A stretch of DNA of 63,960 bases, filler included, from Salisapilia sapeloensis CBS 127946 (taxonomy: Eukaryota; Protista; Oomycota), in assembly GCA_023334545.1 (NCBI GenBank). It is 11 parts of 11 records of this genome, joined end to end, with 100 filler letters (N's around TTAATTAATTAA, not from the genome) between each part and the next. Parts side by side here need not be neighbours in the genome. Positions count along the whole stretch, not along the records: positions 48,986 to 62,858 come from JAADVB010000395.1; 10 more parts are not named here. The stretch is one strand, 5' to 3'. The first letter of the stretch is position 1; each line of letters opens with the position of its first letter. Of this stretch, positions 48,986-62,856 are shown piece by piece. Below the pieces are notes generated by a model that saw only the letters and a program-made list of their open reading frames with translations, was not told the origin of the DNA and ran no database searches. A program made the translations under genes and the position numbers.

Positions 48986-51900
48986 CTATGGGTCGGAATG
49001 ACGTTTGTCGATGGGAACAATGCACTGCTACCCCAGTGCTTTGCCAAGGACACGAGCGGCAAGGTCTGTGGCCAGCCACTGTGGCCGGCCAAGTCGAACA
49101 ATGCGCGAGGTTCTGCCTCTTCCTCCTGCCGCGAACGAGAGTGCAGCCGACCGGCCGAGTTTGTGTGTTGTAATCGCTTCCATGACCGTGGACTCTGCCG
49201 TGGTTGCGGGAAGACGAGCCAGGAGCGTCTTCGGGGTCCTCCGTCTAAGCACGCTTCCACGCACATCTACGACGCGCAGGTGGCCAATTTCCACCACAAC
49301 GGAACGCTATTTCTGAAAGACTTCCAGTCTCGCCGCCCGCCCGAGAGAGACATCCACTGGGGAACGACGAAGCGATTGTCGTGTCCCAACCTCGTCGGTG
49401 TGGTGGTGCTGGCCAAGCGTGGAGGCGCCCTTCGTTTGACGGACGAGATATACTGGGGAAAGGTCGCTCTACACGGCGAGTCACGCCATGAGGCCCGTAA
49501 GCGTCAAGAAGGTTGTCTTGTGATTGAGTTCCTGGAGTATGACACAAGCGGGTCCGAAAACCCCATCATGAGCCGAGGCATGGAAGCAGGCAGCTCGGTC
49601 GCTATCATCGATTGCCAGACGTTCACGCCTGAGTTTGTGCCGGTGCTGAAAGCGCTGGAACGGCAGCGGTCGATGCCCACGCCTTTCGAGAATGGTTCCC
49701 TAGTTAACATCAACGCTAGTATCCAGTGCGACGTCGGCCAAGTTGGGAACATGGATGACGATGATGCTTATGCTCCCGATACACAGGCGGATGCTTATTA
49801 CCTTGCGGACGAAACGATTATGAACTCTGTAGACAACATTCTCGGAGACAGCAAATTGGATCCGATCGTCCAAATCCGCCGTCACCGCCACGTGTGCCGG
49901 GATCTGAAAGCAGAGTTGATATCGCTGCTCGTGGACTCCACCCTCGATCCTGGCCAGCTCCAGAGTCTTGAAAAAGCTTTGATTCACCCCGTCCACTGCA
50001 CGCTCGGACCCCCAGGTGCTGGAAAGTCGTATCTCGGAGTGGTGACTGTGCGAGCGCTCTTGCTTATCCGGAAGTACTGGCAGCGAGTGTTTCCATCGAT
50101 TGGCCAGCCGCCTATACTGGTTCTTTCCTACAAGAACCACGCCATTGACGAGTTTCTGCTCGACCTCGTCAAATCCGATCCATTTCTGGGTTATCAGACC
50201 GCCCAACAAGGCAACCGGTACACACGGCAAGGAGGGTTCAAGCCTCTCGTTCGCATCGGAGGAGGGTGCAGTGAGCCGAAACTAGCTCCCTATGGCGAGT
50301 ACAACTTGCGGTCGTCGATGCACAGCGTCGTACGCATCGAGAAAGAAATTGAGGAGTGCCTCCAAGCTCTAGACGCTACGAGTGTGGTACAGGGTGACAT
50401 TCTGTCCATCTTTGAGGCACGACTGGTGATCCAAGATCAGGCAAAGGCTGATGGAAAGGCGCAGAATAAAGAGGACCGTGGCATCCTTTTCGAGGCAGCT
50501 ATGAGCTTGGCTCGGTGCATCACCGCAGTCCACGAGATCAAGAGACTCCGTCACTCGAGTCACGTTGCCAACATGGGAGATAATACTCAAGACCATGACT
50601 TTTACGCCAAAGGCGGCGGAAGCTCGGATGATAGCGAAGAAGAAGAAGAGGAGACGGGTTCAGACACGGACGTGGAGCTCGGAAACAAGCTGCGAGATTT
50701 TGTCTATAGCCTGAACGCTCTAAGTGGAAGCGGAGTCAGCTCAGTTCCTCTCAACGTCAACGTTCTTTCTTCGCTGCATGTTGCTATCAAGCACTATGGC
50801 CCGGTTGCTTCCCATCCGATCGAGCTACTCTATCGCTGGATGACAGGGTTTAAGCCCAATCCACCGTGTGAATTCTCTCAGGACAAATGCTCCGAGGTTG
50901 CGACCGCAGGTGGATGCTACTGCCAACTGCACCGCTGCAACTATGAGGTGCAGGACGTCGGACAATGCACGAATGAAGTCGTGTTTGAAGGTGTAGCATT
51001 CTGTGTCCTGCACAAGTGCTCAGATACAGATTGCGCTGAGCCTCGTCTTTTCGAAGGGCAAAAGTACTGTATGGAGCACACGTGCTACATATGTCTCGAG
51101 CAAGGAGCGGCTCTACCCAACAAGGCAGCGGAAGCTCCACCTAGAAACACGTGCGAGGAGCATCCTCTGTGCTGGTACTCGGGTGCCAGTGGCGTATGCA
51201 GCAATCTGGCGACGACCACTTCAGACTGCTGCGAATTCCATAAGCCAGTGTGTTGCAAGGGAATGACGAGAAAAGGGAAGCCGTGCAAGTTGGATGCTTG
51301 GAAAGATGGAAATGGATACTGTCAGGCCCATAAGAAGCAGGGCGCCAATAGTGAAAGGGCTTCGAAAGCCGCTGTAGCCAGTGGTCCCAAGCCATCCGCA
51401 CCGTCGTACCAAAGTGTTCTCGAGCAAAAGCAATGCTCAGCGTTGAATCGCAAAGGCAAGCCTTGTAAGGGAACCGCCTTGCCTGGGCTTCCGTTTTGCG
51501 TGGACCACCGCAGCCAGTCTTCTGCGCAGACGAACACGAGCAGCTTTACTGCAAGTGTATTTTCGAGCGTCGGCCAGGCCTTAGGAGGTCAAGAGATGAT
51601 GCAGACGACTGCACAGGACTCCACTGAAGAGGGCTTGGAAGAGAAAGCTCCAGCTAGTGCAGTAGGCGACGATGGTCAGGACCTCGCGAGTAAGCCCGCT
51701 GCGAGCAACAACGACGATGAAGCTTCAAGCAAAGATGTGGATGAAGTGGGCTCTCACTCGTTCACGTCGTCCGATAGCTTCGTTGATGCAATTGATGCAG
51801 ACGCAGACGTGTTAGATGATGAAATCGAAGAGTCGGAGCACCTCCAGCATCTCCGAGAAGTGGGCGACGTGAACACCGTCGACCGTATGGAGGAAGAAAT

Positions 51901-54900
51901 AGTCGACGAAGATGATGAAATGGAGAAACTGTCGCCACTGGATACGGCCGACATGGACGGGGAAGGAGAGCTGATCGACACGACAGAATGGCAGTGGTCG
52001 TTCAGTTTCGAAAAGAGATGGGGCTGCATTCTGGCGTTGCTGCGAGAGTGGAGAGTGCTCGAGCAGGACCTTCGCACCGACGTCCGTGACTTGATCTCGG
52101 TCAAGAAAGTAAAGTTGCAGAACGAAAAGGTCAAAGCCAAGGCTCAAGTGTTCGAAGGCAAAGCTGTGATTGGAGGCACGATGACCGGTTGCGTGTCGCG
52201 TCTGGAGGCGGTTCGAGCGACCAAGCCGTTTTGCATCATCGTAGAAGAAGCGAGCGAGGTGCTCGAGCCGCTGCTCTTTTCCTGTCTCTCACCTACCACC
52301 TGTAAGCTGGAAATGATCGGCGACCATTACCAGCTCCAACCACAAGTGATGTCTCGCTTCGACTTTGAGAAGGTGAACAAGATCAGCATCTCACTTTTTG
52401 AGCGTCTCATTCGCGCACCGCCCGAGCACCAAGTACCTTATGACACACTGTCGGTTCAGCGACGTATGCGCCGAGATATCTGCGATCTCACACGTGAACT
52501 GTACACTGACATTGTGGAGATCGAGGACCACGAGCAATGCCAGCGGAAGACGATTGACTGGAAGTCAACAAGTGGTCTAGATGCATGGAGTATGAAGATT
52601 TCGCAGATGAGTCAACGTCCGCTTGATATTGTCGAAGGAAAAGGAAGAGAAGTTCCTGGTGTGGCACCGCACTTGTTCTTCTGGAAACACACTGGAAGCC
52701 AGGAGCGAGCACAAGTCGGGCTGAGTCGAGTGAATCCGCGGGAGGCGGACATGGTGGTGAATTTGGCGCAGTACCTGGTCCAGTGCGGTGTGCCGCATGA
52801 GTCGATTGCAATTCTCACGCCGTACAAGGGTCAGTTGATGCTTCTTCGGAAGCAGATCATGAGCACCAAGAGCTTTGTCAAGTCGATCAAAATTGGTCGA
52901 GGAGCCGAGAGGAAGACGGTTCCAAAGTGCGTCCTCTCTACGGTGGACCGTTTTCAAGGCGACGAAGCTGATATTACGCTCATCTCTCTTGTTATCGACG
53001 GAAAGTCGCGCACTCCATTTGTGAAACTCCGGAACCGGATGATCGTCTTGCTGAGCCGCGCGCGTATTGGGATGTTCATCGTCGGCAACGCGGACTACTT
53101 TGATCAAGTGTCTCACTGGCAGCAAACAATCGACCGTCTGAGTCAAAGCGCCCCGTCCGACAGTTTGCCAGCGTTGAACGCAAGCTGTGAAATGTATGAC
53201 GGAGCACGCATTGGGTCCGAGTTACCGCTTTGCTGCCCCGTGCATCGGTCGTCCAAGAAGGAGGCAAAGGCAGCCAGCGACCTCAAGCTGGGCTTTTGCC
53301 AGGTCGAGTGCACCGAGTCACTCAAGTGCGGACACGAGTGTGGGAAAAAGTGCCACTACCCAGACGTGAGCACGCACAAGTCCACATGTGACGTTGAGAT
53401 GGAGGTGCCGTGCATACGCCACGTTCAAAAGAAGCAATGCCACAAAGTATGCTGCGCTACTGGAGAGACCACATTTAAAGCCGCGCTCCGAAAGTACGAG
53501 TGTGACGTCAAGGTGAATATCCAGCTCCCTTGTCTACACGAGAAGGCGGTCACATGTGGCGAAGAAACGAAGATTCTGAACGAGTCATTAGCCCCGCCAA
53601 AGTGTATGGAAAGAGCCTTTACGCCGTACGTGTACCCCGATTGCCTGCATTCGCTCGACTGCAGCTGTGTCGAGTACTACTCGTACAAGGACGGAAACGT
53701 ACCCCATTGCACCAAGAAGACCGATTTCACGCCTCCGTGCGGCCACACTATCAGCGTCAACTGCTACCGGCGGAAGAGCCTTGTGGCCAATCCAGAGACG
53801 TTCGTATGCTCGCAGACAGTGTGGATGGAACTCCCTCGATGCGGTCACCAAGCTTGCGTGTCGTGTCCGCAAGCTCAGGCGCTCGTGCGGTGGAGCGGCC
53901 GTGGTCTCGAGGAGGCGGATGTCGTTCGGGAGGGCGAGGTATACGGGGAGATGGATTACCCGTGCACCGCCAAAGTCAGCTTTGTGCGTCGTTGCGGACA
54001 CCGAGAGGAGATGGTGTGTGAGCGAGCTTTCGCGAATGCGCTAGCTTCCTCTACGTGCCAGGAGAAGAAAGCGTTCCGAAACCCGGAATGCGGTCATATC
54101 TTCCACACGACCTGCTCCATGATAACAAAGCTGGTGCAAAAGGCTGCCCAGAACCTCGGCGCCTATGGCCAAACACCTCGAACGACGGCGGTGATCAGAG
54201 TCAAGGAAGGAACTGAGGATGCCGAGTTCCGGAACTTCAAGCTGAATGTCCAGTGCAAAGCCACTGTCACCGTCGAGCGAAGCTGCGGCCATGTGCAGGA
54301 GAAGCAGTGCCAAGATGCGCGCCACATCAAGGACAACTGCACCGAAAAGGTCATCACGGAACGACCAACGTGTCGTCATAAGGTCGTGCTACCCTGCAGC
54401 GATGCTATTCTACTCACCACATGGCACCCTTGGGACATTGCGACGGACGCTGCAACCGTGGATCTCTTCCGTGGAAGCTCCGTCTTACTCGACACTCTCT
54501 CGCCGCCGGATGAAGTGTCTCCGGTCTCGCTACCCGAGTGCACTCAATCGGTAACGCTGCGGCGAGCAAAAACTTGTGGTCATGATGTTCGAATGAAGTG
54601 TTGTGATGCGCTTCGATCTTTGCAAGGACAAGAGGACACAGAGAGTGCGCGCTGCAACGCCACAGTCGTAAAGAAGCTGTCATGCGGGCACGAGATGACA
54701 GCGACGTGCTGCACGAACGTCTCCAAGACGAAGTGCAAAGAGAAGGTGGAGAAACCTTGCTGGAACAGTGCCAAGTGTGGCCAGAACGTCTCTGTGCAGT
54801 GCTTTGCTTCTTCTATTGGTGCAGTGCAGTGCGACTCGAAGACGGATTGGACGTGTGCCGCAGGGCACACCTTCCAGGTGGCTGAGTGCCAGCTCGGTGT

Positions 54901-57900
54901 CGCTCAGGATTGTCCGTCCTGCGCTGTCGATAAGGTAGAGATGGAGAAAGATAACATCATCACGCTCGTCGAAGACGACGATGCAGAGCCGCTGAAGTGG
55001 ATGAACAAGTGTTTGGAACCCGCAATCCCGCCTCTTGCTTCCCAAGTTACCGCGTCTACGACACGAGGAGCAATGGTCGAATTTGCACAGCGGCAGTTGG
55101 CTCTTGTGGAGCGCTTTCAAAGCTGGATGGAGAGAGAGAAGGACATTTGGTCGCGTGCGCTGTTCCGCCCTCAAGCCGTTCCGATCTTTGGCATCCGGCA
55201 AGGGAAGAAGAACAAGATGAGCGAGAAGCTCGAGTCGTTCGAGCTGAAAGACTTTCCTTCGGCCCCAGGCGGTCGTGGCCTCGAGCTATATGAGGCGACA
55301 CAAGCAAACTTTGACGCGGTGACTTCGAGCAAATCCAAGCAAGTAATCGTGTTTGGTATCATGTACACGCTCGGCATCCTGTCCGACCCGAAGAGCTATC
55401 CGAAGAACGAGAAGTCTAAAAAGAAGCGACAGACACAGTCGCAAGCATTTGCTCAGCTGGATAAATGGATAACGACTCAGCAGAATAAGCACGGGTACGA
55501 CGCGATGTTCACGTCGAGCAGAAAGATGGCGAAAGACACTGTATTCAAACACGTCGGGAAGCTAATGCTGTGGGAGCCATTCACAGCGGTTCCGACCCAC
55601 GAGATGGAGTTGACGGGGGAGAATTACGATGCGATTCGACGCTGCCTATCCACCGAATCTTGCTGGAAGGAGGGTCATGAGCACGTTAAATTCAGTCGCG
55701 CATGGAAAGACAAAGAAACTTCTGGTGTGTCCGAATCTGCCGCTTCGAGCGAGGAATGGCGAAAGGTTGATGAACTACTGAGTACCTCGTTTGCGTGGGC
55801 GGATGGACTGGAGCTGGAACACCCTTGGAAGGGAAGTTCACTGTGCTGTGGCGAGCACACCTTGCCCGACCAAGTGAAGCGTAGACTCCAGAACAACCTT
55901 CATTTCATTCGAGACGCGCCCCATGCAGCGCCGAAAATTGACACGTCCAAGCGTCCTGGACCGTTTTCAGGCATCAAGCATCTTCAAAACGTGGTAGAGA
56001 ACCATCCGTTTGATGAAGCGCAGCTCTTCATGGCTCTTGAGCTACTCCACGTTTCAAGCTCGAATAGTACGTCCGACGTGGAAACATGTCTCAAAGAGTA
56101 CGTGGACCTGATGCAGTCCCAAAGACGCCCGTGCCACCCTCTCTTCGTGGTCGCAGCCGCTCGGACTGGTGCATGCTTGAACCCCACAGCGTCAGACTCT
56201 ACGGACCTACTAGCGCTTTTCCGTGTGCTGTATCCGGACGCGAGCGACATGTGGCTCGATCCAAAGGAGGGCGTGGCCCCTCTTTCTCCTGCATCCAACG
56301 TGTCGGCATCGAGAACGTTGGCTGGGTCCTCCGACGATATCCAGCAAGCGTGGTTGTTGCTGCAGCAGGAGTCTAGCATTCGATCCGATGCGATGGACGA
56401 GCTGCTAAAGATGGTCGGTTTGCGGAAAGTGAAACTCGCTGCGATCGAAATGTTCAAGAGCGCACTGCAGTTCCAAAAGATGACGGCAAAGCAGCAACAG
56501 AAGAATGTAATTTCCCATAACTACTGCTTCAGTGGAAATCCCGGTACTGGGAAGTCGGTCTCGGCTAAGCTCTTTGCTCAGATCCTGCACGACTCGGGGA
56601 CACGAAGAAAGAGCACTGCCGAGCTGTGCACCGCACAAGAGCTCAAGGACGGATCTTCGTCCGATTTTCGGAAAAAGGTGCAGAAAGCCATGGGCGGCGT
56701 GCTCTTCATCGACGAGTGCTACGAGCTAGACCCAGCGGCCGACGCAAAAGGCAAGCCGATCGTGGCGGAGCTGCTCACTGCCGCAGAGGATCATCGGGGA
56801 GACTTATCCATCATCCTCGCCGGGTACCAAGACGACATTCATGAGAAGCTGTACAAGTACAACGACGGCTTTGCAAGTCGCTTTGAAGAAGTCTACTTCG
56901 AGGACTTTGAGGAGTCAGAGCTGCGAGCGATATGGGATAGGCTGCTGCGAGAGCGAGAGTGGGCGGCCGAGGATATCTGCGGTCGCGTAGCTTGCCGACG
57001 CCTTGCTCGTGCCAGCGGACGAAAAGGCTTCGGGAACGCCCGTGAAGTTCGCAAGGTGTTCGAACGCGTCACCCAGCGAGCGATGAATCGGAGAGACTTT
57101 GACGGGTCGCTTGAGATCCGGCCGGTGGATATTCTTGGTGAGCGGCCGACTGAAAACCCGAAGTTGGCAGAGCTCCAGAAAGAGCTCGAGGGCAAGGTCG
57201 GCTGGAAGCGCATCAAGGCAGCTGTGCAGGAATTAATTGACGTGTGCGACGCCAACTACGAGCGGGAGCTGAAAGGGCAAGACACGGCCCCGGTGTTCTT
57301 GAGCCGCTTGCTTCTAGGCGCGCCGGGGACGGGCAAAACGACATTTGCCAGCATCTTTGGTCGGCTCCTTAGATATCTAAACTTCTTATCAAACGGCGAC
57401 GTCGTGATGAAAGCCGCGAGCGACTTTGTCGGGCAGTACATAGGCCAGTCGCAAACGAAAACGAACGATATTTTGAAGCTTGCGAAGGGCAAGGTACTGG
57501 TGATCGATGAAGCGTACGCTCTAAACGACAACCACTTTGGGAAGCAAGTGCTGGACGTACTTGTGGAAAAGGTGCAGGGAACAGAGAGCGACGACATAGC
57601 GGTCCTGCTACTTGGCTATGAAGAGAACATGCTGGAGATGCTGCGCACGCAGAACCCTGGACTTGCGCGTCGTTTTCCGAAGGAGTACGCGCTCTACTTT
57701 GATGACTACTCGGAGCACGAGCTGCTCGAAATCTTCCAGAAGCAGTGCGCAACGAAGCATGTTGCATGTCCTTGGAAAGTGTCCGAAATCGTGCTTCAGC
57801 GTCTGGCGATGCAGAAGAGACAAAAGCACTTTGGAAACGCTGGTGCTGTTCTAGCACTTCTTCACAATGCCATTGCAAAGGCCACGACTCGGACGGCGCC

Positions 57901-59227
57901 TGGTGAGTCGATTGTACTGACGGAAGAAGACGTCGAGAGCGACATGCACCGACGTGCACTTGACAGAGCGCCAGCCGGTAGGCGTCAGGATGGAAACTCA
58001 GATCCGCTGGCAGCACTGGATAAGCTTTATCGTGTCGACAACGTCAAGAAGGAACTAGTTCGCCTGAAAGCGTTGCTAGAGGTGGCGCAACGGGAAGGGT
58101 CGGAGGCTCCGAGCATTGGACACTTTGTCTTCCGCGGCGCACCAGGCACTGGTAAGACGACTGTCGCTCGCACGATGGCGCAGATTTTGCATGCGATGGG
58201 CGTCATCGCCACCGACAAGTTCGTAGAAACCTCTGGCTTGAATCTAACGGGAGAGTACGTCGGACAGACGAAGAAGAAGGTGGAGGAGCAGCTGGAGCAG
58301 GCGTGCGGCGGTCTGCTCTTCATTGACGAGGCGTACGAAGCTGGGAAGGGGCATTTCGGAGAGGAGGCGATGACATCGCTCTTGGCGGCAATGACCAATC
58401 CAAAGTACAGCGGGCTTGTCATCATTATCGCGGGTTACAGTCAAGAGCTGGATGAGATGCTGGATCGCAATGCCGGACTTAAGAGCCGCTTTACGCGCTT
58501 CTTGGACTTTCAGGATTGGGAGGTGGACGACTGTATTCAGTTCACCATTGAAAAGGCAAAGAAAGAGGACTTTGAGCTGGCACCAGACGCGATCGGATCG
58601 CTCTCGCAGACGTTCAGGGAACTTCGTCAGCTGCCTGGATTTGGAAACGGACGAGATGTCATAAAGGTATGGGAGGGCATGGTCGAGTATCGAGCTCAGC
58701 GTGTTCTGGGTAAGCCAGAGCTAGTTCGACAGCTGACAATGGAGGATGCCGATGCTGCAGGTCACCGGGTCGTTGAAAGCCGCATGCCACCGACCTTTAC
58801 AAAGCGGATGCAAAAGAACCCCCCGCCAGACCTTCCAGTAGCAATTGGTGCGGACTTTTCGAATGCGCCGCGACGATCTACAGACACTGCAAAATGTGGG
58901 ATCGAGGAGAAGCAGGAGCACAGCTTTATGTCCGACACGGACCATCGAGACCCCGGCGTCTCAGACGAAGTATGGGAAGAAGTGGCTGAAGCCAAAGCCG
59001 CATTTCAGAAATTAACGGAGGATGCTGAACGTTGTGCGGATCCGAAGAAAAAGGAAGACGCAAAAAAGAAGTTGAAAGACTTTCAAGCAGTGCAGAAGAA
59101 GTTGCGGCAGCTGGGCAAATGCCCTGTTGGCTTTGCGTGGCTAAAAGTTGCATGTGGGTGGCGGTGTGCTGGTGGCTCTCACGCGGTTACCGATGAACAA
59201 CTGGAGAAGCTCTTTACGGCAGGATAA
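48986..59227 (+). CDS. ZNFX1-like SF1 RNA helicase / NF-X1 zinc fingers / RZ-like finger / three CbbX-SpoVK-type AAA+ domains (>3409 aa, 5' truncated)
   Basis: Helicase motifs GPPGAGKS (50006), SYKNHAID, EEASE (52244), IGDHYQL, SLFERL, LTPYKGQ, TVDRFQG, SRAR (53054). Many CGH-type fingers 53231..54840. Walker A GNPGTGKS (56534), GAPGTGKT (57317), GAPGTGKT (58136), each with IDE Walker B. Frame open to the contig edge. Confidence 0.93.
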   Translation, partial: LWVGMTFVDGNNALLPQCFAKDTSGKVCGQPLWPAKSNNARGSASSSCRERECSRPAEFVCCNRFHDRGLCRGCGKTSQERLRGPPSKHASTHIYDAQVANFHHNGTLFLKDFQSRRPPERDIHWGTTKRLSCPNLVGVVVLAKRGGALRLTDEIYWGKVALHGESRHEARKRQEGCLVIEFLEYDTSGSENPIMSRGMEAGSSVAIIDCQTFTPEFVPVLKALERQRSMPTPFENGSLVNINASIQCDVGQVGNMDDDDAYAPDTQADAYYLADETIMNSVDNILGDSKLDPIVQIRRHRHVCRDLKAELISLLVDSTLDPGQLQSLEKALIHPVHCTLGPPGAGKSYLGVVTVRALLLIRKYWQRVFPSIGQPPILVLSYKNHAIDEFLLDLVKSDPFLGYQTAQQGNRYTRQGGFKPLVRIGGGCSEPKLAPYGEYNLRSSMHSVVRIEKEIEECLQALDATSVVQGDILSIFEARLVIQDQAKADGKAQNKEDRGILFEAAMSLARCITAVHEIKRLRHSSHVANMGDNTQDHDFYAKGGGSSDDSEEEEEETGSDTDVELGNKLRDFVYSLNALSGSGVSSVPLNVNVLSSLHVAIKHYGPVASHPIELLYRWMTGFKPNPPCEFSQDKCSEVATAGGCYCQLHRCNYEVQDVGQCTNEVVFEGVAFCVLHKCSDTDCAEPRLFEGQKYCMEHTCYICLEQGAALPNKAAEAPPRNTCEEHPLCWYSGASGVCSNLATTTSDCCEFHKPVCCKGMTRKGKPCKLDAWKDGNGYCQAHKKQGANSERASKAAVASGPKPSAPSYQSVLEQKQCSALNRKGKPCKGTALPGLPFCVDHRSQSSAQTNTSSFTASVFSSVGQALGGQEMMQTTAQDSTEEGLEEKAPASAVGDDGQDLASKPAASNNDDEASSKDVDEVGSHSFTSSDSFVDAIDADADVLDDEIEESEHLQHLREVGDVNTVDRMEEEIVDEDDEMEKLSPLDTADMDGEGELIDTTEWQWSFSFEKRWGCILALLREWRVLEQDLRTDVRDLISVKKVKLQNEKVKAKAQVFEGKAVIGGTMTGCVSRLEAVRATKPFCIIVEEASEVLEPLLFSCLSPTTCKLEMIGDHYQLQPQVMSRFDFEKVNKISISLFERLIRAPPEHQVPYDTLSVQRRMRRDICDLTRELYTDIVEIEDHEQCQRKTIDWKSTSGLDAWSMKISQMSQRPLDIVEGKGREVPGVAPHLFFWKHTGSQERAQVGLSRVNPREADMVVNLAQYLVQCGVPHESIAILTPYKGQLMLLRKQIMSTKSFVKSIKIGRGAERKTVPKCVLSTVDRFQGDEADITLISLVIDGKSRTPFVKLRNRMIVLLSRARIGMFIVGNADYFDQVSHWQQTIDRLSQSAPSDSLPALNASCEMYDGARIGSELPLCCPVHRSSKKEAKAASDLKLGFCQVECTESLKCGHECGKKCHYPDVSTHKSTCDVEMEVPCIRHVQKKQCHKVCCATGETTFKAALRKYECDVKVNIQLPCLHEKAVTCGEETKILNESLAPPKCMERAFTPYVYPDCLHSLDCSCVEYYSYKDGNVPHCTKKTDFTPPCGHTISVNCYRRKSLVANPETFVCSQTVWMELPRCGHQACVSCPQAQALVRWSGRGLEEADVVREGEVYGEMDYPCTAKVSFVRRCGHREEMVCERAFANALASSTCQEKKAFRNPECGHIFHTTCSMITKLVQKAAQNLGAYGQTPRTTAVIRVKEGTEDAEFRNFKLNVQCKATVTVERSCGHVQEKQCQDARHIKDNCTEKVITERPTCRHKVVLPCSDAILLTTWHPWDIATDAATVDLFRGSSVLLDTLSPPDEVSPVSLPECTQSVTLRRAKTCGHDVRMKCCDALRSLQGQEDTESARCNATVVKKLSCGHEMTATCCTNVSKTKCKEKVEKPCWNSAKCGQNVSVQCFASSIGAVQCDSKTDWTCAAGHTFQVAECQLGVAQDCPSCAVDKVEMEKDNIITLVEDDDAEPLKWMNKCLEPAIPPLASQVTASTTRGAMVEFAQRQLALVERFQSWMEREKDIWSRALFRPQAVPIFGIRQGKKNKMSEKLESFELKDFPSAPGGRGLELYEATQANFDAVTSSKSKQVIVFGIMYTLGILSDPKSYPKNEKSKKKRQTQSQAFAQLDKWITTQQNKHGYDAMFTSSRKMAKDTVFKHVGKLMLWEPFTAVPTHEMELTGENYDAIRRCLSTESCWKEGHEHVKFSRAWKDKETSGVSESAASSEEWRKVDELLSTSFAWADGLELEHPWKGSSLCCGEHTLPDQVKRRLQNNLHFIRDAPHAAPKIDTSKRPGPFSGIKHLQNVVENHPFDEAQLFMALELLHVSSSNSTSDVETCLKEYVDLMQSQRRPCHPLFVVAAARTGACLNPTASDSTDLLALFRVLYPDASDMWLDPKEGVAPLSPASNVSASRTLAGSSDDIQQAWLLLQQESSIRSDAMDELLKMVGLRKVKLAAIEMFKSALQFQKMTAKQQQKNVISHNYCFSGNPGTGKSVSAKLFAQILHDSGTRRKSTAELCTAQELKDGSSSDFRKKVQKAMGGVLFIDECYELDPAADAKGKPIVAELLTAAEDHRGDLSIILAGYQDDIHEKLYKYNDGFASRFEEVYFEDFEESELRAIWDRLLREREWAAEDICGRVACRRLARASGRKGFGNAREVRKVFERVTQRAMNRRDFDGSLEIRPVDILGERPTENPKLAELQKELEGKVGWKRIKAAVQELIDVCDANYERELKGQDTAPVFLSRLLLGAPGTGKTTFASIFGRLLRYLNFLSNGDVVMKAASDFVGQYIGQSQTKTNDILKLAKGKVLVIDEAYALNDNHFGKQVLDVLVEKVQGTESDDIAVLLLGYEENMLEMLRTQNPGLARRFPKEYALYFDDYSEHELLEIFQKQCATKHVACPWKVSEIVLQRLAMQKRQKHFGNAGAVLALLHNAIAKATTRTAPGESIVLTEEDVESDMHRRALDRAPAGRRQDGNSDPLAALDKLYRVDNVKKELVRLKALLEVAQREGSEAPSIGHFVFRGAPGTGKTTVARTMAQILHAMGVIATDKFVETSGLNLTGEYVGQTKKKVEEQLEQACGGLLFIDEAYEAGKGHFGEEAMTSLLAAMTNPKYSGLVIIIAGYSQELDEMLDRNAGLKSRFTRFLDFQDWEVDDCIQFTIEKAKKEDFELAPDAIGSLSQTFRELRQLPGFGNGRDVIKVWEGMVEYRAQRVLGKPELVRQLTMEDADAAGHRVVESRMPPTFTKRMQKNPPPDLPVAIGADFSNAPRRSTDTAKCGIEEKQEHSFMSDTDHRDPGVSDEVWEEVAEAKAAFQKLTEDAERCADPKKKEDAKKKLKDFQAVQKKLRQLGKCPVGFAWLKVACGWRCAGGSHAVTDEQLEKLFTAG

Positions 59228-60579
59228 CATGAAAACTCGTATTAAACTTTGCTTAAGAACTTGTTGCCTGATCTTTTTGCATGCACGCAAGCGTACCTTG
59301 GTCCCTATACTGGGCGCAAGCGATCTTGTCTTTCATTTTCTTGTTTATGACGCTAATTTACAACTACGAAGAGATCGATTATTAAACAGTGACTAGCTTG
59401 AATAGATAAGGATATGCGATGTCTGCAGAAGGGATATGCTTCAAAAAGTTAACAAGCATATCTTGACTATGGAATATTCATAATGCTGAAGAAGTATAAT
59501 GTTTGGTGAAGTTGGCTGCGCTGTTGAGATGTCAATTTAGAATAGTTTTTGGTAGAGCAGGATATTTGTTTTTCAAGCAATTTCACATATTCGATGCATC
59601 CCACAACAATGAACTCTGAAATGTTCAGCGATTTGATAAATGCGTCGTCGTAAATTCTCGTGTGGATGAAGTAGCATATAGGAAGCAACTCATGGCTTTC
59701 TATTTTAGCACTATAGCAATTAAGTGCAGTTCTTTCGACTAGTAAGGAAATCTCAAATACTCGATTGTTTGCTTCTACCCATATTATGGATAAGATCTCT
59801 TCGAATTGAAACTGTTCATAGCTGGACTGCATCATCAACAAAATTGCTTAGAGGCGTGAGGAATGAAGATGAATTGAGCTACAAGAGTCTACCCAGATAA
59901 GATGAATGTTTTTCAAACCGGTATCTATGCATTTGCTTAAGCGAATAAATGTAGTGATCGCTGACTTCCCATCTATTTAATCTGCCCACCCATGTTAATA
60001 CTATCGATATTTTCGGTCGTGATGCATGAGTGTTATTGAGGCCTTTATTACAAAAATGATCTCCAGGAGCATATAATTGGAAACATGACCGTGTGCAGGT
60101 AATCTTCGTGTGCCTTGATGTATATACGACTATTTCAAATAGAATAGATCACACGCAAACAATGAGCACAGAGGCCGTAGGAACTCCACTTGAAAATCAC
60201 CTTCTAATTTTTAAGCTTTAGTTTCACACTGCATTTGCTGATGAAGATCATTGGTAGAGCAGTGGCACGAAGCGTGGTAAAATTACGCAAGACCAAAGAG
60301 CACACGACTAATAGGGGGATCAAAGTATTCGAAATGTTTCCGATAACTCTGAAATCTAGGCACCTATAAATTTAGCTTTCCTATCCTATATCTCGTTTTC
60401 CGATTTCAAAATATCGAGTACCTCCAGAGGTATCCGATATCTAAATATTGGAATCGGATAAGTTTCAAGGACGAAACCATTTCTGTTTTAGCTTGTGTTG
60501 CCTGAAACAGTTAGCAACGCGTTCGAAGAAACGGCGTGAGAAGTACTAAAAGGAGCATTACACAAGGAGCGCTCCGGAA

Positions 60580-61295
60580 ATGGATGAGGAATGGCAAGCT
60601 GAAGATGCTACAGGTATGTCGGACGAAAACGTCGCTGTCGTATCGAAAACTTACCTGGCTACCGGTGACTACCTATTTCTCGTGACGTGGTTGGAGAACG
60701 AAACAAACTTTGAAAAGATTTATGGCGCCTCACGTACAACAGGAGTAGGCAAAGGTTATAAGAAAACAAAGATGGCTGGTTACGTAGAGATGGCTTCACA
60801 TCTCTACAAGTTTTCGAAGAACGAAAGCTTTCGATGATTGTCGGCTAAAAGCATGCAGCAGAGATGGGAACACTACGTAATGCGCTTCAAGAAAATTTAC
60901 AAAGTAGGACACAAACCGACCTTGGTTTATCTAAAACCGACATTAAAAAGGAGCGTCTATTACCCCAAAACTTAAGCAGCTATGCCCCCAGTTCAACCGA
61001 ATGGTTTGTATGTTCGGAAATCGGCCGAACGTAAGTCCACCCTCGAATTTACAACTTGGCCTTCCCGAAGGAGTTGCGGCTGGTGGTATTGTCACTTCGG
61101 CAAATGATATCACAGTCAAAAGCGTCGAATATCCATCAAGATGAGCTCGAAAGATTAAGTGAAGACCAATACAATGATGAAGTCGCTCCATGCGTATATC
61201 AAAGCAAGGAAAATGAAGAAGATGATGCTTTCTCAACTATGCGCACGGAAACACCGAAAAATTCGAGCTCGTCTGTCTTCGACGTAGATGTTTGA
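60580..61295 (+). pseudogene. Decayed Myb/SANT-like gene (possibly transposon-associated)
   Basis: LVTWLENETNFEKIYG...MASHL...*LSAKSMQQRWEHY.../TDLGLS.../KLKQLCPQFNRMVCMFGNRPNVSPP. One in-frame TGA (60835..60837) and at least two frameshifts are needed to join these blocks, which I recall from an oomycete multicopy family. Confidence 0.55.
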
Positions 61296-61707
61296 TCTAT
61301 GAATTGGGTATGTAGATTAGTTTCTCGTAGAAACGTGGGCTGGTTGAGATAGCTACGAAAGTGTGGAGATCGGTTGTTTTAAGATCCCACAAGCTTTCAA
61401 GTATCGCAGGTCGTCACTTTCCGATTTACTTTTATGCATGCTTAAAAAGGAGTAATATTTCCTCTGGTCGAGCTTTGGGTGTAACAACTAACTCGACCTC
61501 CTTAGTACACAATCACTTTTTCTTTTCTTATCTACGCCAGAGTTGAGCCACAGAAAGATACAAATTGACAAACATACCAAGTATACACAACTTTTTTCGA
61601 TGCTAGTACAGAAACCAACATTATCGACTGAAAACTACTATGTGTATAATATGTCCATGTACTCGCACTTCTTCTCTTCGTGTATTGGATCATCAGTTAT
61701 AGGAAAA

Positions 61708-62856
61708 TTAATCTTTCTTCACTACTGCTGGCTTCTCTTGGTACATTGTCACATTTTTACCGAGTGACAAGCCGTAGCGACTATTGTACTGTTCAAGCGT
61801 CTGAATGTCTTCATCTGCTCGACAAAAGTAGAGCTCTCTTTCGATGTGGTACATGAGGTGCGGTCGAATGTAGTGGAAGGCGACAGAGTCCGGCGCACAG
61901 CATTCTTCCTTGTTGCGAATTCCGCCAAGGTTTTGATGGTATAGTATCGACCATGGAGCCATCTTGTCTGGACTGAGCCAGTACATGTTATGCGGTTTAT
62001 CCCAGTGCCAGCGTTCCCTCCCTTTGTAGTCTCTCGTGTCCCACGGGTAGACGCTTTCCCACATCATACAGAACGAGATGGAGGTATCTTCCGGAAGCGT
62101 GCGGCCCATCGTGTTGGAAAGACAGGTATTGCCGTTCATGCGCTCAACAAAGCGGGTCAAGTAGAGCTTGTTCATGGCATATCCGGGTCCACCCGAGTTA
62201 AATACCCATCGATCCCATCGTGACACAAACTCTTCCTTAAGCTTTGGATCCACAATAAACTTTTCCACTTTCGCTTGCGTCAAGTTGAACCGATGCCCGA
62301 CTTGGATCGGCTCCGTCTTGTGTCGCATGACCATCTCTGGGCGACGAACGTACGCACGAACGTTGTCGACAATGACATATGCATCATCATCTGCCTTGTA
62401 GAACCAGTCGTAGTCATTTCGATAATGGTCATATACGTACTGGAGACTAACTTTTGTCTTTAGCCAGAGATGTTTGTGGTCAGATGGAACTTCAAAGCCT
62501 ATGACAGGGAAAGACAAGCTCCCAACGTCGATCGTACCGCTCACGTTGCTGAAAAACACGAGCTTATCACAGCGCTGGCCCCACGTTTCAGCAACCGACC
62601 GAGCTTTCGTCTCATGATACACCGATATTGTGTTCACGAAGCAAAAGAGGCGAGGGTAGATGCCAGTCTGCGAGCCGTTCTTGTACGGCCCTTTGTCCAC
62701 ATCGATAAGGCGCAGAGCTGGCCGAGATTGCTCGAGATCCTTAGCACACAAAGTCTTTCGGCTCCACCGAGCGGAGGCGTTTTGGTTTTTAGGCTTGAAT
62801 GTCGCCGTATCACTGACTGCATCGGTAGTGGCAAGATAGACGAAGCTCACAAGTAC
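61708..62856 (-). CDS. GT31 beta-1,3-galactosyltransferase, C1GALT1-like (5' truncated)
   Basis: RLFCFVNT, TWGQRCDKLVFFS, LWLKTK, YDWFYKADDDAY (DxD), FNSGGPGY, EDTSISFC, AFHYI. Confidence 0.92.
   Translation of the reverse strand, partial: VLVSFVYLATTDAVSDTATFKPKNQNASARWSRKTLCAKDLEQSRPALRLIDVDKGPYKNGSQTGIYPRLFCFVNTISVYHETKARSVAETWGQRCDKLVFFSNVSGTIDVGSLSFPVIGFEVPSDHKHLWLKTKVSLQYVYDHYRNDYDWFYKADDDAYVIVDNVRAYVRRPEMVMRHKTEPIQVGHRFNLTQAKVEKFIVDPKLKEEFVSRWDRWVFNSGGPGYAMNKLYLTRFVERMNGNTCLSNTMGRTLPEDTSISFCMMWESVYPWDTRDYKGRERWHWDKPHNMYWLSPDKMAPWSILYHQNLGGIRNKEECCAPDSVAFHYIRPHLMYHIERELYFCRADEDIQTLEQYNSRYGLSLGKNVTMYQEKPAVVKKD

What the first reader, a model, noticed from the sequence alone, without database searches (positions are those of the whole stretch)
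54848..54922. RZ-like zinc finger with the putative catalytic cysteine retained
Seen: WTCAAGHTFQVAECQLGVAQDCPSC directly after the NF-X1 array (aa 1951-1975). Established: the RZ finger of RNF213 and ZNFX1 has the pattern C-x2-G-H-x3-[VI]-G-[ED]-C-x8-C-x2-C, and the Cys after E/D is the proposed transthiolation site for RING-independent ubiquitylation, including of LPS by RNF213. Here the pattern holds with a 7-residue spacer and no trailing IGG. Inference: possible E3 activity, internal rather than near the C-terminus.
Basis: partly seen in the sequence, partly recalled or inferred. Interest (0 to 1): 0.7.

Follow-up and report, generated by a model that had tools for sequence, protein, structure and literature searches.

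The report
RZ-like treble-clef finger capping a zinc stalk
The motif is real and conserved in about a hundred relatives of a giant helicase-AAA+ protein. It is a generic treble-clef zinc finger that shares only its first half and one extra cysteine with the RZ ubiquitin-ligase finger, so ligase activity is possible but less likely than a structural role.

Summary
The spacing is C-x3-H-x6-C-x7-C-x2-C, and chance almost never produces it (3 of 50,000 shuffles of the Cys-rich array).

Cys1964 is kept in 102 of 103 relatives (oomycetes, chytrids, diatoms, Hydra and others). The finger is not a full RZ domain:
- Pfam RZ scores 16 bits against a cut-off of 27, and only over profile positions 9-38 of 54. 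True RZ domains score 81-89 bits over positions 4-53.
- The general-base His, the IGG strand, the second beta sheet and the ubiquitin-binding helix are all absent.
- The CPxC starts a 20-residue helix instead.

Profile and shape searches place the finger in the DUF4379 treble-clef superfamily. The RZ finger itself matches that superfamily, and ordinary DUF4379 repeats hit the RZ profile as strongly or more strongly. What is shared specifically with RZ is the Cys at His+7, which occurs in only 2.5% of DUF4379 repeats.

That Cys also corresponds to the fourth ligand of the eleven preceding CCHC units, and it has an invariant partner, Cys1945. I could not read model coordinates, so free versus zinc-bound is unresolved. 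My estimate is about 50% structural and about 22% catalytic.

The parts
48998..59227 (+). Uninterrupted ORF of 3409 aa. Layout: SF1 helicase, Cys/His zinc-finger stalk, terminal finger, conserved middle region, three AAA+ modules, conserved C-terminal motif.
   Evidence: ORF list and translation. Pfam AAA_11/AAA_12, 3x AAA plus AAA_lid_6. 94 relatives at up to 47% identity. Identical contigs without joints in three samples.
49955..53092 (+). UPF1/ZNFX1-like SF1 helicase core (about aa 320-1365), interrupted by a long Cys-rich and acidic insertion.
   Evidence: Pfam AAA_11 (9e-18) and AAA_12 (5.6e-30). ZNFX1-like proteins hit at E 3e-71.
53231..53440 (+). Head of the zinc array (aa 1412-1481): 15 conserved Cys/His in NFX1-like spacing.
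   Evidence: Conserved-column table.
53501..54802 (+). Eleven repeated CCHC units (aa 1502-1935) with spacing C-x7-12-C-x1-5-H/C-x5-7-C. Unit 11 (aa 1913-1935) has four Cys.
   Evidence: Conserved-column table. Units are mutually homologous: unit 10 vs unit 9 Prob 97%, unit 11 vs unit 10 Prob 90%.
54830..54922 (+). Terminal finger (aa 1945-1975). Treble-clef ligands are Cys1953, His1957, Cys1972 and Cys1975. There are two further invariant cysteines, Cys1945 and Cys1964.
   Evidence: conservation. (RZ and DUF4379 similarity). (hairpin 1949-1952 / 1958-1961).
54887..54889 (+). Codon of Cys1964, at His+7, the position of the RZ nucleophile (RNF213 C4516, ZNFX1 C1860).
   Evidence: hhalign alignment. 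Cys in 102 of 103 family rows, against 20 of 799 DUF4379 repeats. Lies in a short, confidently modelled helical turn (pLDDT about 96).
54830..54832 (+). Codon of Cys1945, the second family-specific invariant Cys. It lies four residues before the first strand of the hairpin.
   Evidence: 103 of 103. By strand register it faces Cys1964 at the hairpin base (inference).
54914..54976 (+). Long helix (aa 1973-1993) that starts at the CPxC and pairs with a second helix (about aa 2023-2046) in a helical hairpin.
   Evidence: AlphaFold2 secondary structure. The VIA matches cover only this helical hairpin.
54977..55417 (+). Conserved region after the finger (aa 1994-2140), of unknown fold. It is kept even in paralogs that lost the finger.
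   Evidence: BLAST and alignment A1. Paralogs P0019, P0021, P0024, P0034.
56486..58747 (+). Three CbxX/SpoVK-type AAA+ modules (about aa 2497-3250).
   Evidence: Pfam AAA 3.1e-41 in 3 stretches and AAA_lid_6 in 3 stretches.
59120..59212 (+). Conserved C-terminal motif (aa 3375-3405) of the form C-P-x-G-[FY]-x-W ... G-W-R-C-x-G-G-S-H-[FY]-V.
   Evidence: Regex hit at the extreme C-terminus of 53 of 94 relatives. No Pfam match.

Best explanation
The motif is the last zinc module of a long, rigid Cys/His stalk in a giant ZNFX1-related helicase that also carries three AAA+ modules.

Its fold is a GH-type treble clef of the DUF4379 superfamily, to which the RZ finger also belongs. A beta hairpin carries Cys1953 and His1957 at its tip. 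Cys1972 and Cys1975 (CPxC) sit at the start of a long helix and close one zinc site. That helix runs on into a helical hairpin that ties the stalk to the middle region and the AAA+ modules. This part is shown by sequence and model evidence.

The following part is inferred. Cys1964 lies with the equally invariant Cys1945 at the base of the hairpin, far from that zinc. It corresponds to the fourth ligand of each preceding CCHC unit. It most likely completes a cross-braced zinc site with the knuckle of unit 11 (Cys1921, Cys1927), as in RING/NFX1-type arrays. On this reading the finger is a structural cap and coupling element, not an active site.
For: Fold and family:
- The finger matches DUF4379 repeats at hhalign Prob 96.6%, P 6e-10, over 31 columns without a gap, with the same His-x14-Cys spacing as 505 of 799 repeats.
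- A profile search of 1.84 billion proteins returns tandem DUF4379 proteins as the top hits.
- 29 of the 30 nearest language-model clusters are DUF4379, and shape search finds DUF4379 clusters.
- 22 of 65 members hit Pfam DUF4379, against 8 of 65 for RZ.
- RZ itself matches DUF4379 at Prob 94.7% over 49 columns.

Not a full RZ domain: plus the models.

Structural role of Cys1964:
- The array is 12 regular four-ligand units, and C1945, C1953, H1957 and C1964 fit the unit pattern.
- The finger aligns with standard units so that Cys1964 falls on their fourth ligand (Prob 64%).
- Cys1945 is invariant as well (103 of 103) and by strand register faces Cys1964.
- The Cys sits in a confidently ordered turn (pLDDT about 96). 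The RZ nucleophile, by contrast, lies on an extended or unresolved loop (10.1101/2021.05.10.443411; PMC11549300).
- Of 48,161 solved chains, only four reach Z 2 or more. Two are the NFX1-type finger arrays of Fap1 (Z 3.5, 59 aligned, 20% identity) and ZNFX1 (Z 2.5).
- No RING, U-box or Miz domain was found by Pfam.
Against: - I could not read model coordinates, so no Cys-Cys distance was measured. The cross-brace is inferred from secondary structure and ligand counts.
- Cys at His+7 is rare in DUF4379 (2.5%) but invariant both here and in RZ. Masking it shortens the RZ alignment from 28 to 11 columns.
- The array holds 65 conserved Cys/His, which is 16 x 4 + 1. One residue is therefore spare, and it could be Cys1964.
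- In paralogs the array ends right after a standard unit without any CPxC cap. This suggests the units are self-contained, which would leave Cys1945 and Cys1964 without a zinc.
- The structural matches are weak (Z 2.5-3.5).
- The Miz domain of ZNFX1 was itself found only by comparing predicted and solved structures, after mutants showed a second ligase domain (10.1101/2025.10.14.682297). My failure to see an E2-binding domain therefore carries little weight.
Confidence: 0.5

Rival explanations
1. Minimal RZ-type active site. The treble clef binds one zinc through Cys1953, His1957, Cys1972 and Cys1975. Cys1964 is free and takes ubiquitin (or a ubiquitin-like protein) from an E2 by transthiolation. 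The helicase and AAA+ modules choose or remodel the substrate, as in ZNFX1 and RNF213. A base other than the RZ His would be needed, possibly Cys1945 in a relay.
For: - The spacing is the same as RZ (C-x3-H-x6-C) and the alignment is specific and reciprocal.
- Cys is invariant in 102 of 103 rows, against 2.5% in DUF4379 repeats.
- Homology to DUF4379 and RZ assigns the zinc to the other four ligands, and the strand length puts Cys1964 far from that zinc. The RZ nucleophile likewise sits at the end of the domain opposite the zinc (PMC11549300).
- The count of 65 conserved Cys/His leaves exactly one spare.
- The protein is a relative of ZNFX1, a proven RZ ligase (10.1101/2025.10.14.682297).
Against: - There is no general-base His, no second beta sheet, no IGG strand and no ubiquitin-binding helix. 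In ZNFX1 that helix is needed for activity of the isolated domain.
- The finger is below the RZ threshold, and UniRef names its relatives 'AAA+ ATPase domain-containing' rather than 'RZ-type domain-containing'.
- The flanks of the Cys are not conserved as they are in RZ.
- The Cys lies in an ordered turn beside a second invariant Cys.
- No E2-docking domain was detected.
- Paralogs dispense with the whole finger but keep the rest of the protein.
Confidence: 0.22
2. Cys1945 and Cys1964 form a free dithiol pair at the base of the hairpin with some other job. Candidates are a redox switch or disulfide that stiffens or releases the stalk, or a site for another metal or ligand. Neither zinc cross-bracing nor ubiquitin transfer would be involved.
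For: Both are invariant, both are specific to this family, and by strand register they face each other. Paralog arrays that end after a standard unit suggest that the units are self-contained, which would leave these two without zinc partners.
Against: This is a cytosolic or nuclear type of protein in which every other conserved Cys looks like a zinc ligand. There is no precedent in ZNFX1 or NFX1 arrays. Nothing in the data points to redox chemistry.
Confidence: 0.12
3. The resemblance to RZ is a chance product of a Cys-rich sequence and the motif has no function of its own.
For: The region holds 9% Cys. Sub-threshold zinc-finger hits are common.
Against: The pattern arises in 3 of 50,000 shuffles. 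Column-shuffled profiles never approach the observed score. The motif is invariant across about 100 relatives from several eukaryotic supergroups.
Confidence: 0.01

Closest known systems
RZ-type zinc finger of RNF213 and ZNFX1 (Pfam PF20173)
   Same: CHCC zinc ligands with C-x3-H ... C-x2-C. Gly before the His, an aromatic at His+2, an aliphatic at His+4, Pro after the third Cys. A further invariant Cys at His+7, the position of the nucleophile. Carried by a ZNFX1-related helicase. Profile match Prob 92%.
   Different: Only the first half matches (Pfam positions 9-38, 16 bits against 81-89 bits for true RZ). The loop is one residue shorter. There is no general-base His, no IGG strand or second sheet and no N-terminal ubiquitin-binding helix. 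The CPxC opens a long helix. The residues around the Cys are not conserved. The finger is internal and fused directly to the zinc array.
DUF4379 'probable treble clef zinc finger' (Pfam PF14311), mostly tandem repeats in bacterial, phage and giant-virus proteins
   Same: W-x-C-x2-G-H, aromatic at His+2, His-x14-C-P-x-C spacing. Best profile match (Prob 96.6%, P 6e-10, no gap). Nearest by language-model features and by shape.
   Different: Single copy at the end of a different kind of array, not a tandem repeat. The query itself does not hit the Pfam model at E 1 or better, and 22 of 65 members hit only below threshold. Invariant Cys at His+7 and at Cys-8, which DUF4379 repeats almost never have. 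The conserved Arg of DUF4379 is absent.
NFX1-type / CCHC finger stalk of ZNFX1 and Fap1 (NFX1)
   Same: Same place in the protein, directly after the SF1 helicase. ZNFX1 also contains C-x10-C-G-H-x5-C units. Two of the only four solved chains matching units 11-12 plus the cap at Z 2 or more are Fap1 174-235 and ZNFX1 1288-1364.
   Different: Pfam zf-NF-X1 does not hit. The units here are longer (about 34 aa per four ligands) and more regular. The structural Z scores are low (2.5-3.5).
ZNFX1 as a whole (helicase, 12 zinc fingers, Miz/Z-ring, RZ)
   Same: SF1 helicase followed by a zinc-finger arm and then an RZ-like finger. Sequence relationship over helicase and fingers (E 3e-71).
   Different: No Miz-like domain was detected. 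The finger abuts the array instead of lying about 400 residues downstream. Three CbxX-type AAA+ modules and a conserved C-terminal motif are added. The armadillo N-terminal domain was not looked for.

Membership tests
RZ-type zinc finger (PF20173) | Reaches the curated profile score over the whole domain | tested here: not met
   16.2 bits against a cut-off of 27, positions 9-38 of 54. 8 of 65 relatives hit, best E 0.0096. True RZ domains score 80.8-88.6 bits over positions 4-53.
RZ-type zinc finger (PF20173) | CHCC zinc site with C-x3-H ... C-x2-C | tested here: met
   C1953, H1957, C1972 and C1975 are invariant. The loop is one residue shorter than in RZ. Metal binding itself was not tested.
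RZ-type zinc finger (PF20173) | Strictly conserved non-ligand Cys six residues after the His (the nucleophile) | tested here: inconclusive
   The Cys is present and is kept in 102 of 103 rows. Whether it is free of zinc could not be determined, because no coordinates were available. It also matches the fourth ligand of the CCHC units.
RZ-type zinc finger (PF20173) | Conserved His eight residues after CxxC (general base; H4537 in RNF213, H1881 in ZNFX1) | tested here: not met
   Lys at that place in the query. At most 3 of 103 His in any of the 16 columns after CxxC.
RZ-type zinc finger (PF20173) | Beta sandwich of two two-stranded sheets, preceded by a short ubiquitin-binding helix | tested here: not met
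   AlphaFold2 (pLDDT 88 and 91) gives one hairpin followed by a 20-residue helix. Before the finger lies another zinc unit, not a helix. No RNF213 chain appears among the structural matches.
RZ-type zinc finger (PF20173) | E2-dependent transthiolation activity | not testable with these tools
   Needs E2 discharge or activity-based probe assays.
DUF4379 treble clef (PF14311) | Reaches the curated profile score | tested here: not met
   The query does not hit at E 1 or better. 22 of 65 relatives hit below threshold, best E 4e-4.
DUF4379 treble clef (PF14311) | W-x-C-x2-G-H ... C-P-x-C motif and spacing, with profile-level homology | tested here: met
   hhalign Prob 96.6%, P 6e-10, 31 columns without a gap. 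The family profile retrieves tandem DUF4379 proteins. Language-model and shape neighbours are DUF4379.
NFX1-type zinc finger (PF01422) | Profile match / C-x-H-x-C-x3-C-H spacing | tested here: not met
   No zf-NF-X1 hit in the array at E 1 or better. Only weak structural similarity to the Fap1 and ZNFX1 finger arrays (Z 3.5 and 2.5).

The most novel reading that the evidence does not exclude
Cys1964 is a free nucleophile. On that reading a pan-eukaryotic family of giant helicase-AAA+ proteins (oomycetes, chytrids, diatoms, dinoflagellates, Hydra) carries a stripped-down RZ-type transthiolating ligase site built on a DUF4379-like treble clef. The animal RZ finger would then be a freed and elaborated version of the terminal cap of the NFX1-type finger stalk.
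Probability: 0.2. Interest if true: 0.75.

Novelty: new variant of a known kind. Interest (0 to 1): 0.45.

Why it matters
RZ fingers are the active sites that let RNF213 and ZNFX1 put ubiquitin on lipopolysaccharide and RNA. So far they have been traced back only as far as choanoflagellates, the closest unicellular relatives of animals.

If the conserved Cys here is catalytic, this chemistry would be far older and would be tied to a second kind of giant ATPase machine found across eukaryotes.

If the Cys is structural, which I think more likely, the result is still useful in three ways:
- It places the RZ finger in a large treble-clef superfamily (DUF4379).
- It shows that ordinary DUF4379 repeats can reach the RZ profile threshold, so a match to the motif alone should not be read as an E3 site.
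- It suggests how a catalytic Cys could arise from a zinc ligand at the end of a finger array.

Tried and rejected
- A word-index search restricted to aa 1860-2100 found nothing. The whole-length search was needed to find relatives.
- Sequence and profile searches of solved structures found no RNF213, ZNFX1 or NFX1 chain, only a chance zinc-ribbon hit.
- Foldseek against the PDB gave nothing significant for either model. The second look at its hits gave nothing with Z 2 or more.
- VIA on the 241-residue model matched only the helical hairpin.
- Weak Pfam RING-like hits at aa 1689-1709 were rejected, because the extra His there is not conserved.
- Simple serial and shifted ligand assignments were considered. 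Both need a ligand at each end of a 4-5-residue strand to share one zinc, which the predicted secondary structure makes unlikely. Without coordinates this remains an argument, not a test.
- Literature searches found nothing on the function of DUF4379 or on zinc assignments in Fap1.
- No RNA family or tRNA lies in the piece.
- Laid contigs show that the stretch is present and unspliced in three samples. They cannot show transcription.

Full report
**The observation.** Window 54848-54922 (+) translates to the quoted 25 residues. They are aa 1951-1975 of one uninterrupted ORF, 48998-59227, 3409 aa. Pfam finds:
- an SF1 helicase (AAA_11 and AAA_12, up to aa 1365);
- three AAA modules with AAA_lid_6 (about aa 2500-3250);
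- nothing significant in between.

The spacing is C1953-x3-H1957-x6-C1964-x7-C1972-x2-C1975. It arose in 3 of 50,000 shuffles of the Cys-rich array and in 0 of 5,000 shuffles of the whole protein.

**The family.** A whole-length search found 94 relatives, the best at 47% identity. They come from Phytophthora and other oomycetes (about 45%), many chytrids, diatoms, Spongospora, Chromera, Symbiodinium and Hydra. True ZNFX1-like proteins appear as distant relatives (E 3e-71). None of the close relatives carries the precomputed RZ family. They carry PF26600 and PF26601, which my Pfam copy lacks. UniRef names them 'AAA+ ATPase domain-containing', whereas ZNFX1 proteins are named 'RZ-type domain-containing'. 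The source organism is not among the hits and was not identified. Identical contigs without joints occur in three samples from two studies.

**Conservation.** In 65 aligned relatives the columns W1951, C1953, H1957, C1964, G1967, C1972 and C1975 are invariant or nearly so, and so is C1945. After a profile search of 1.84 billion representatives, 103 family rows were available. Cys1945 is kept in 103 of 103. Cys1964 is kept in 102 of 103, and the exception is a Ser in a 172-aa fragment. The residue before Cys1964 (E/D in RZ) and the RZ Gly are not conserved. No column in the 16 residues after CxxC holds more than 3 His in 103.

**What defines an RZ domain.** This paragraph rests on the literature. 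The domain is a short ubiquitin-binding helix followed by a beta sandwich of two two-stranded sheets. One zinc is held by C4505, H4509, C4525 and C4528 in RNF213 (C1849, H1853, C1869, C1872 in ZNFX1). A non-ligand Cys on a flexible loop is the nucleophile (C4516 / C1860). A His eight residues after the CxxC is the general base (H4537 / H1881). Both catalytic residues lie at the end of the domain opposite the zinc (PMC11549300; 10.1101/2025.10.14.682297; 10.1101/2021.05.10.443411). ZNFX1 additionally uses a Miz-like E2-binding domain.

**Test against RZ.**
- Pfam RZ hits the finger below threshold: 16.2 bits against 27, E 0.008, over profile positions 9-38 of 54 only.
- Eight true RZ domains score 80.8-88.6 bits over positions 4-53.
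- A profile of the family finger against an alignment of 122 true RZ domains gives a local hhalign match of Prob 92%, P 6e-7, over 28 columns and one gap. Cys1964 falls on the RZ nucleophile.
- Controls show the match is specific. 200 column shuffles gave a mean of 10.7 and a maximum of 19.9, against the observed 35.1.
- The RZ profile compared with the whole 628-column array finds only this finger (score 31; the next is 13).
- The finger HMM run on 122 full-length ZNFX1 proteins hits the RZ finger of every one, and its 40 best-scoring hits are all RZ fingers.
- Replacing Cys1964 by Ala in the profile shortens the match to 11 columns.

**The wider class.**
- 22 of 65 members hit Pfam DUF4379 ('probable treble clef'), against 8 for RZ.
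- Language-model features put 29 of the 30 nearest named clusters in DUF4379.
- The big profile search returned, above most family members, proteins with 6-13 tandem matches. Pfam confirms these as DUF4379 arrays (E 1e-120 to 1e-244).
- Two of those ordinary DUF4379 proteins hit the RZ profile at 23.8 and 27.3 bits, on the same positions 9-38/42. That is more than the finger here scores. The best repeat happens to have a Cys at His+7.
- hhalign gives finger vs DUF4379 Prob 96.6%, P 6e-10, 31 columns without a gap, and RZ vs DUF4379 Prob 94.7%, P 6e-8, 49 columns.
- The finger's His-x14-Cys spacing is the commonest one in DUF4379 (505 of 799 repeats).

So the finger, DUF4379 and RZ belong to one treble-clef class, and the partial RZ hit is largely a property of that class. 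What the finger shares with RZ alone is the Cys at His+7, which is present in only 20 of 799 DUF4379 repeats.

**Structure.** AlphaFold2 with family alignments gave confident models (pLDDT 87.7 for aa 1900-2140 and 90.9 for aa 1908-2000). The elements are:
- strands 1949-1952 and 1958-1961, flanking the C1953...H1957 turn;
- a short helical turn 1963-1966 that holds Cys1964 (pLDDT about 96);
- a helix 1973-1993 that starts at the CPxC.

This is a treble clef and not a beta sandwich, and no helix precedes it. The long helix pairs with a second helix, and only this hairpin found matches in the PDB. For the small model Foldseek found nothing. An exhaustive VIA search found only four chains with Z 2 or more. 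Two of them are the NFX1-type finger arrays of Fap1 (Z 3.5, rmsd 3.2, 59 aligned, 20% identity) and of the ZNFX1 stalk (Z 2.5). No RNF213 chain appeared. The shape search of the ESM Atlas found DUF4379 clusters among its nearest models (TM 0.43-0.48; the best row, unnamed, had TM 0.58).

**The array context.** Conserved Cys/His columns show eleven regular four-ligand units from C1502 to C1935, with spacing C-x7-12-C-x1-5-H/C-x5-7-C. Then C1945, C1953, H1957 and C1964 follow in the same order, and finally C1972 and C1975. Standard units are homologous to each other (Prob 97%), and unit 11 is a variant of them (Prob 90%). The finger aligns weakly with standard units so that Cys1964 falls on their fourth ligand (Prob 64%). 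The Cys therefore has two readings: the RZ nucleophile position, or the fourth ligand of a twelfth unit.

Treble-clef homology assigns the finger's own zinc to C1953, H1957, C1972 and C1975. The predicted strands put Cys1964, and by register Cys1945, at the other end of the hairpin. The same geometry holds for C1913 and C1935 in unit 11. Every conserved Cys in such arrays is expected to bind zinc. I therefore infer a cross-braced chain in which the knuckle of each unit is closed by the two cysteines flanking the next hairpin. The last knuckle, having no next unit, is closed by a canonical CPxC. That makes Cys1964 a ligand together with C1921, C1927 and C1945.

This is inference, because the tools return no coordinates. 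Three things count against it. The 65 conserved ligands leave one spare. Chytrid paralogs end their arrays after a standard unit without a cap. Phytophthora kinase-bearing paralogs have lost units 11-12 and the finger while keeping the downstream region.

**Verdict.** The motif is real, ancient and conserved. Its first half is homologous to the RZ finger through the DUF4379 treble-clef class. It is not a member of the RZ family as defined, because four defining features were tested and not met. The conserved Cys at the nucleophile position keeps the ligase idea alive at about 0.2. A structural cap is my best reading at about 0.5. A zinc count on a Cys1964 mutant and an E2~Ub probe experiment would settle it.

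Noticed in passing
window 59120-59212 (aa 3375-3405): A near-invariant motif lies at the extreme C-terminus, of the form C-P-x-G-[FY]-x-W ... G-W-R-C-x-G-G-S-H-[FY]-V-S-D. It is found at the end of 53 of 94 relatives, including ascomycete helicase-AAA proteins that lack the finger array. There is no Pfam match and its function is unknown.
   Followed up: partly
window 53501-54889 (aa 1502-1964): The 'NF-X1 array' is in fact twelve very regular CCHC units (C-x7-12-C-x1-3-H-x5-6-C) separated by linkers of 8-48 residues. Pfam zf-NF-X1 does not recognise them. ZNFX1 contains a few units of the same spacing.
   Followed up: partly
proteins P0215, P0240; alignments: The RZ finger and DUF4379 match profile to profile (Prob 94.7% over 49 columns). 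Ordinary bacterial DUF4379 repeats reach 23.8-27.3 bits on the Pfam RZ model, whose cut-off is 27. The RZ model can therefore cross-hit this class.
   Followed up: partly
proteins P0019, P0021, P0024, P0025, P0034 (Phytophthora paralogs): Three paralogs (P0019, P0021, P0034) have lost units 11-12 and the terminal finger but keep the conserved region after it. P0024 matched only that downstream region, and P0025 matched it likewise. In P0019, P0021 and P0034 the last remaining unit has gained a Cys two residues after the His (C-G-H-x-C-x3-C). Some of these paralogs carry a protein kinase domain.
   Followed up: partly
window 50798-51697 (aa about 600-830): Inside the helicase region lies a run of short Cys/His motifs. 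It gives a sub-threshold hit to DUF5763 (22 bits against 26) and is followed by long acidic, Ser-rich stretches.
   Followed up: no
window 61711-62850 (-): A neighbouring ORF of 380 aa has a Fringe-like glycosyltransferase domain (E 8e-11). It runs to the edge of the piece.
   Followed up: no
window 58986-61985: G+C falls from about 55% inside the ORF to about 40% downstream of its stop codon. No RNA family or tRNA is found there.
   Followed up: no
window 54977-55417 (aa 1994-2140): A conserved region after the finger consists of a helical hairpin and a small alpha/beta part. It includes a W-x-R-P-L-F-x-P motif and has no match in Pfam or in solved structures.
   Followed up: partly
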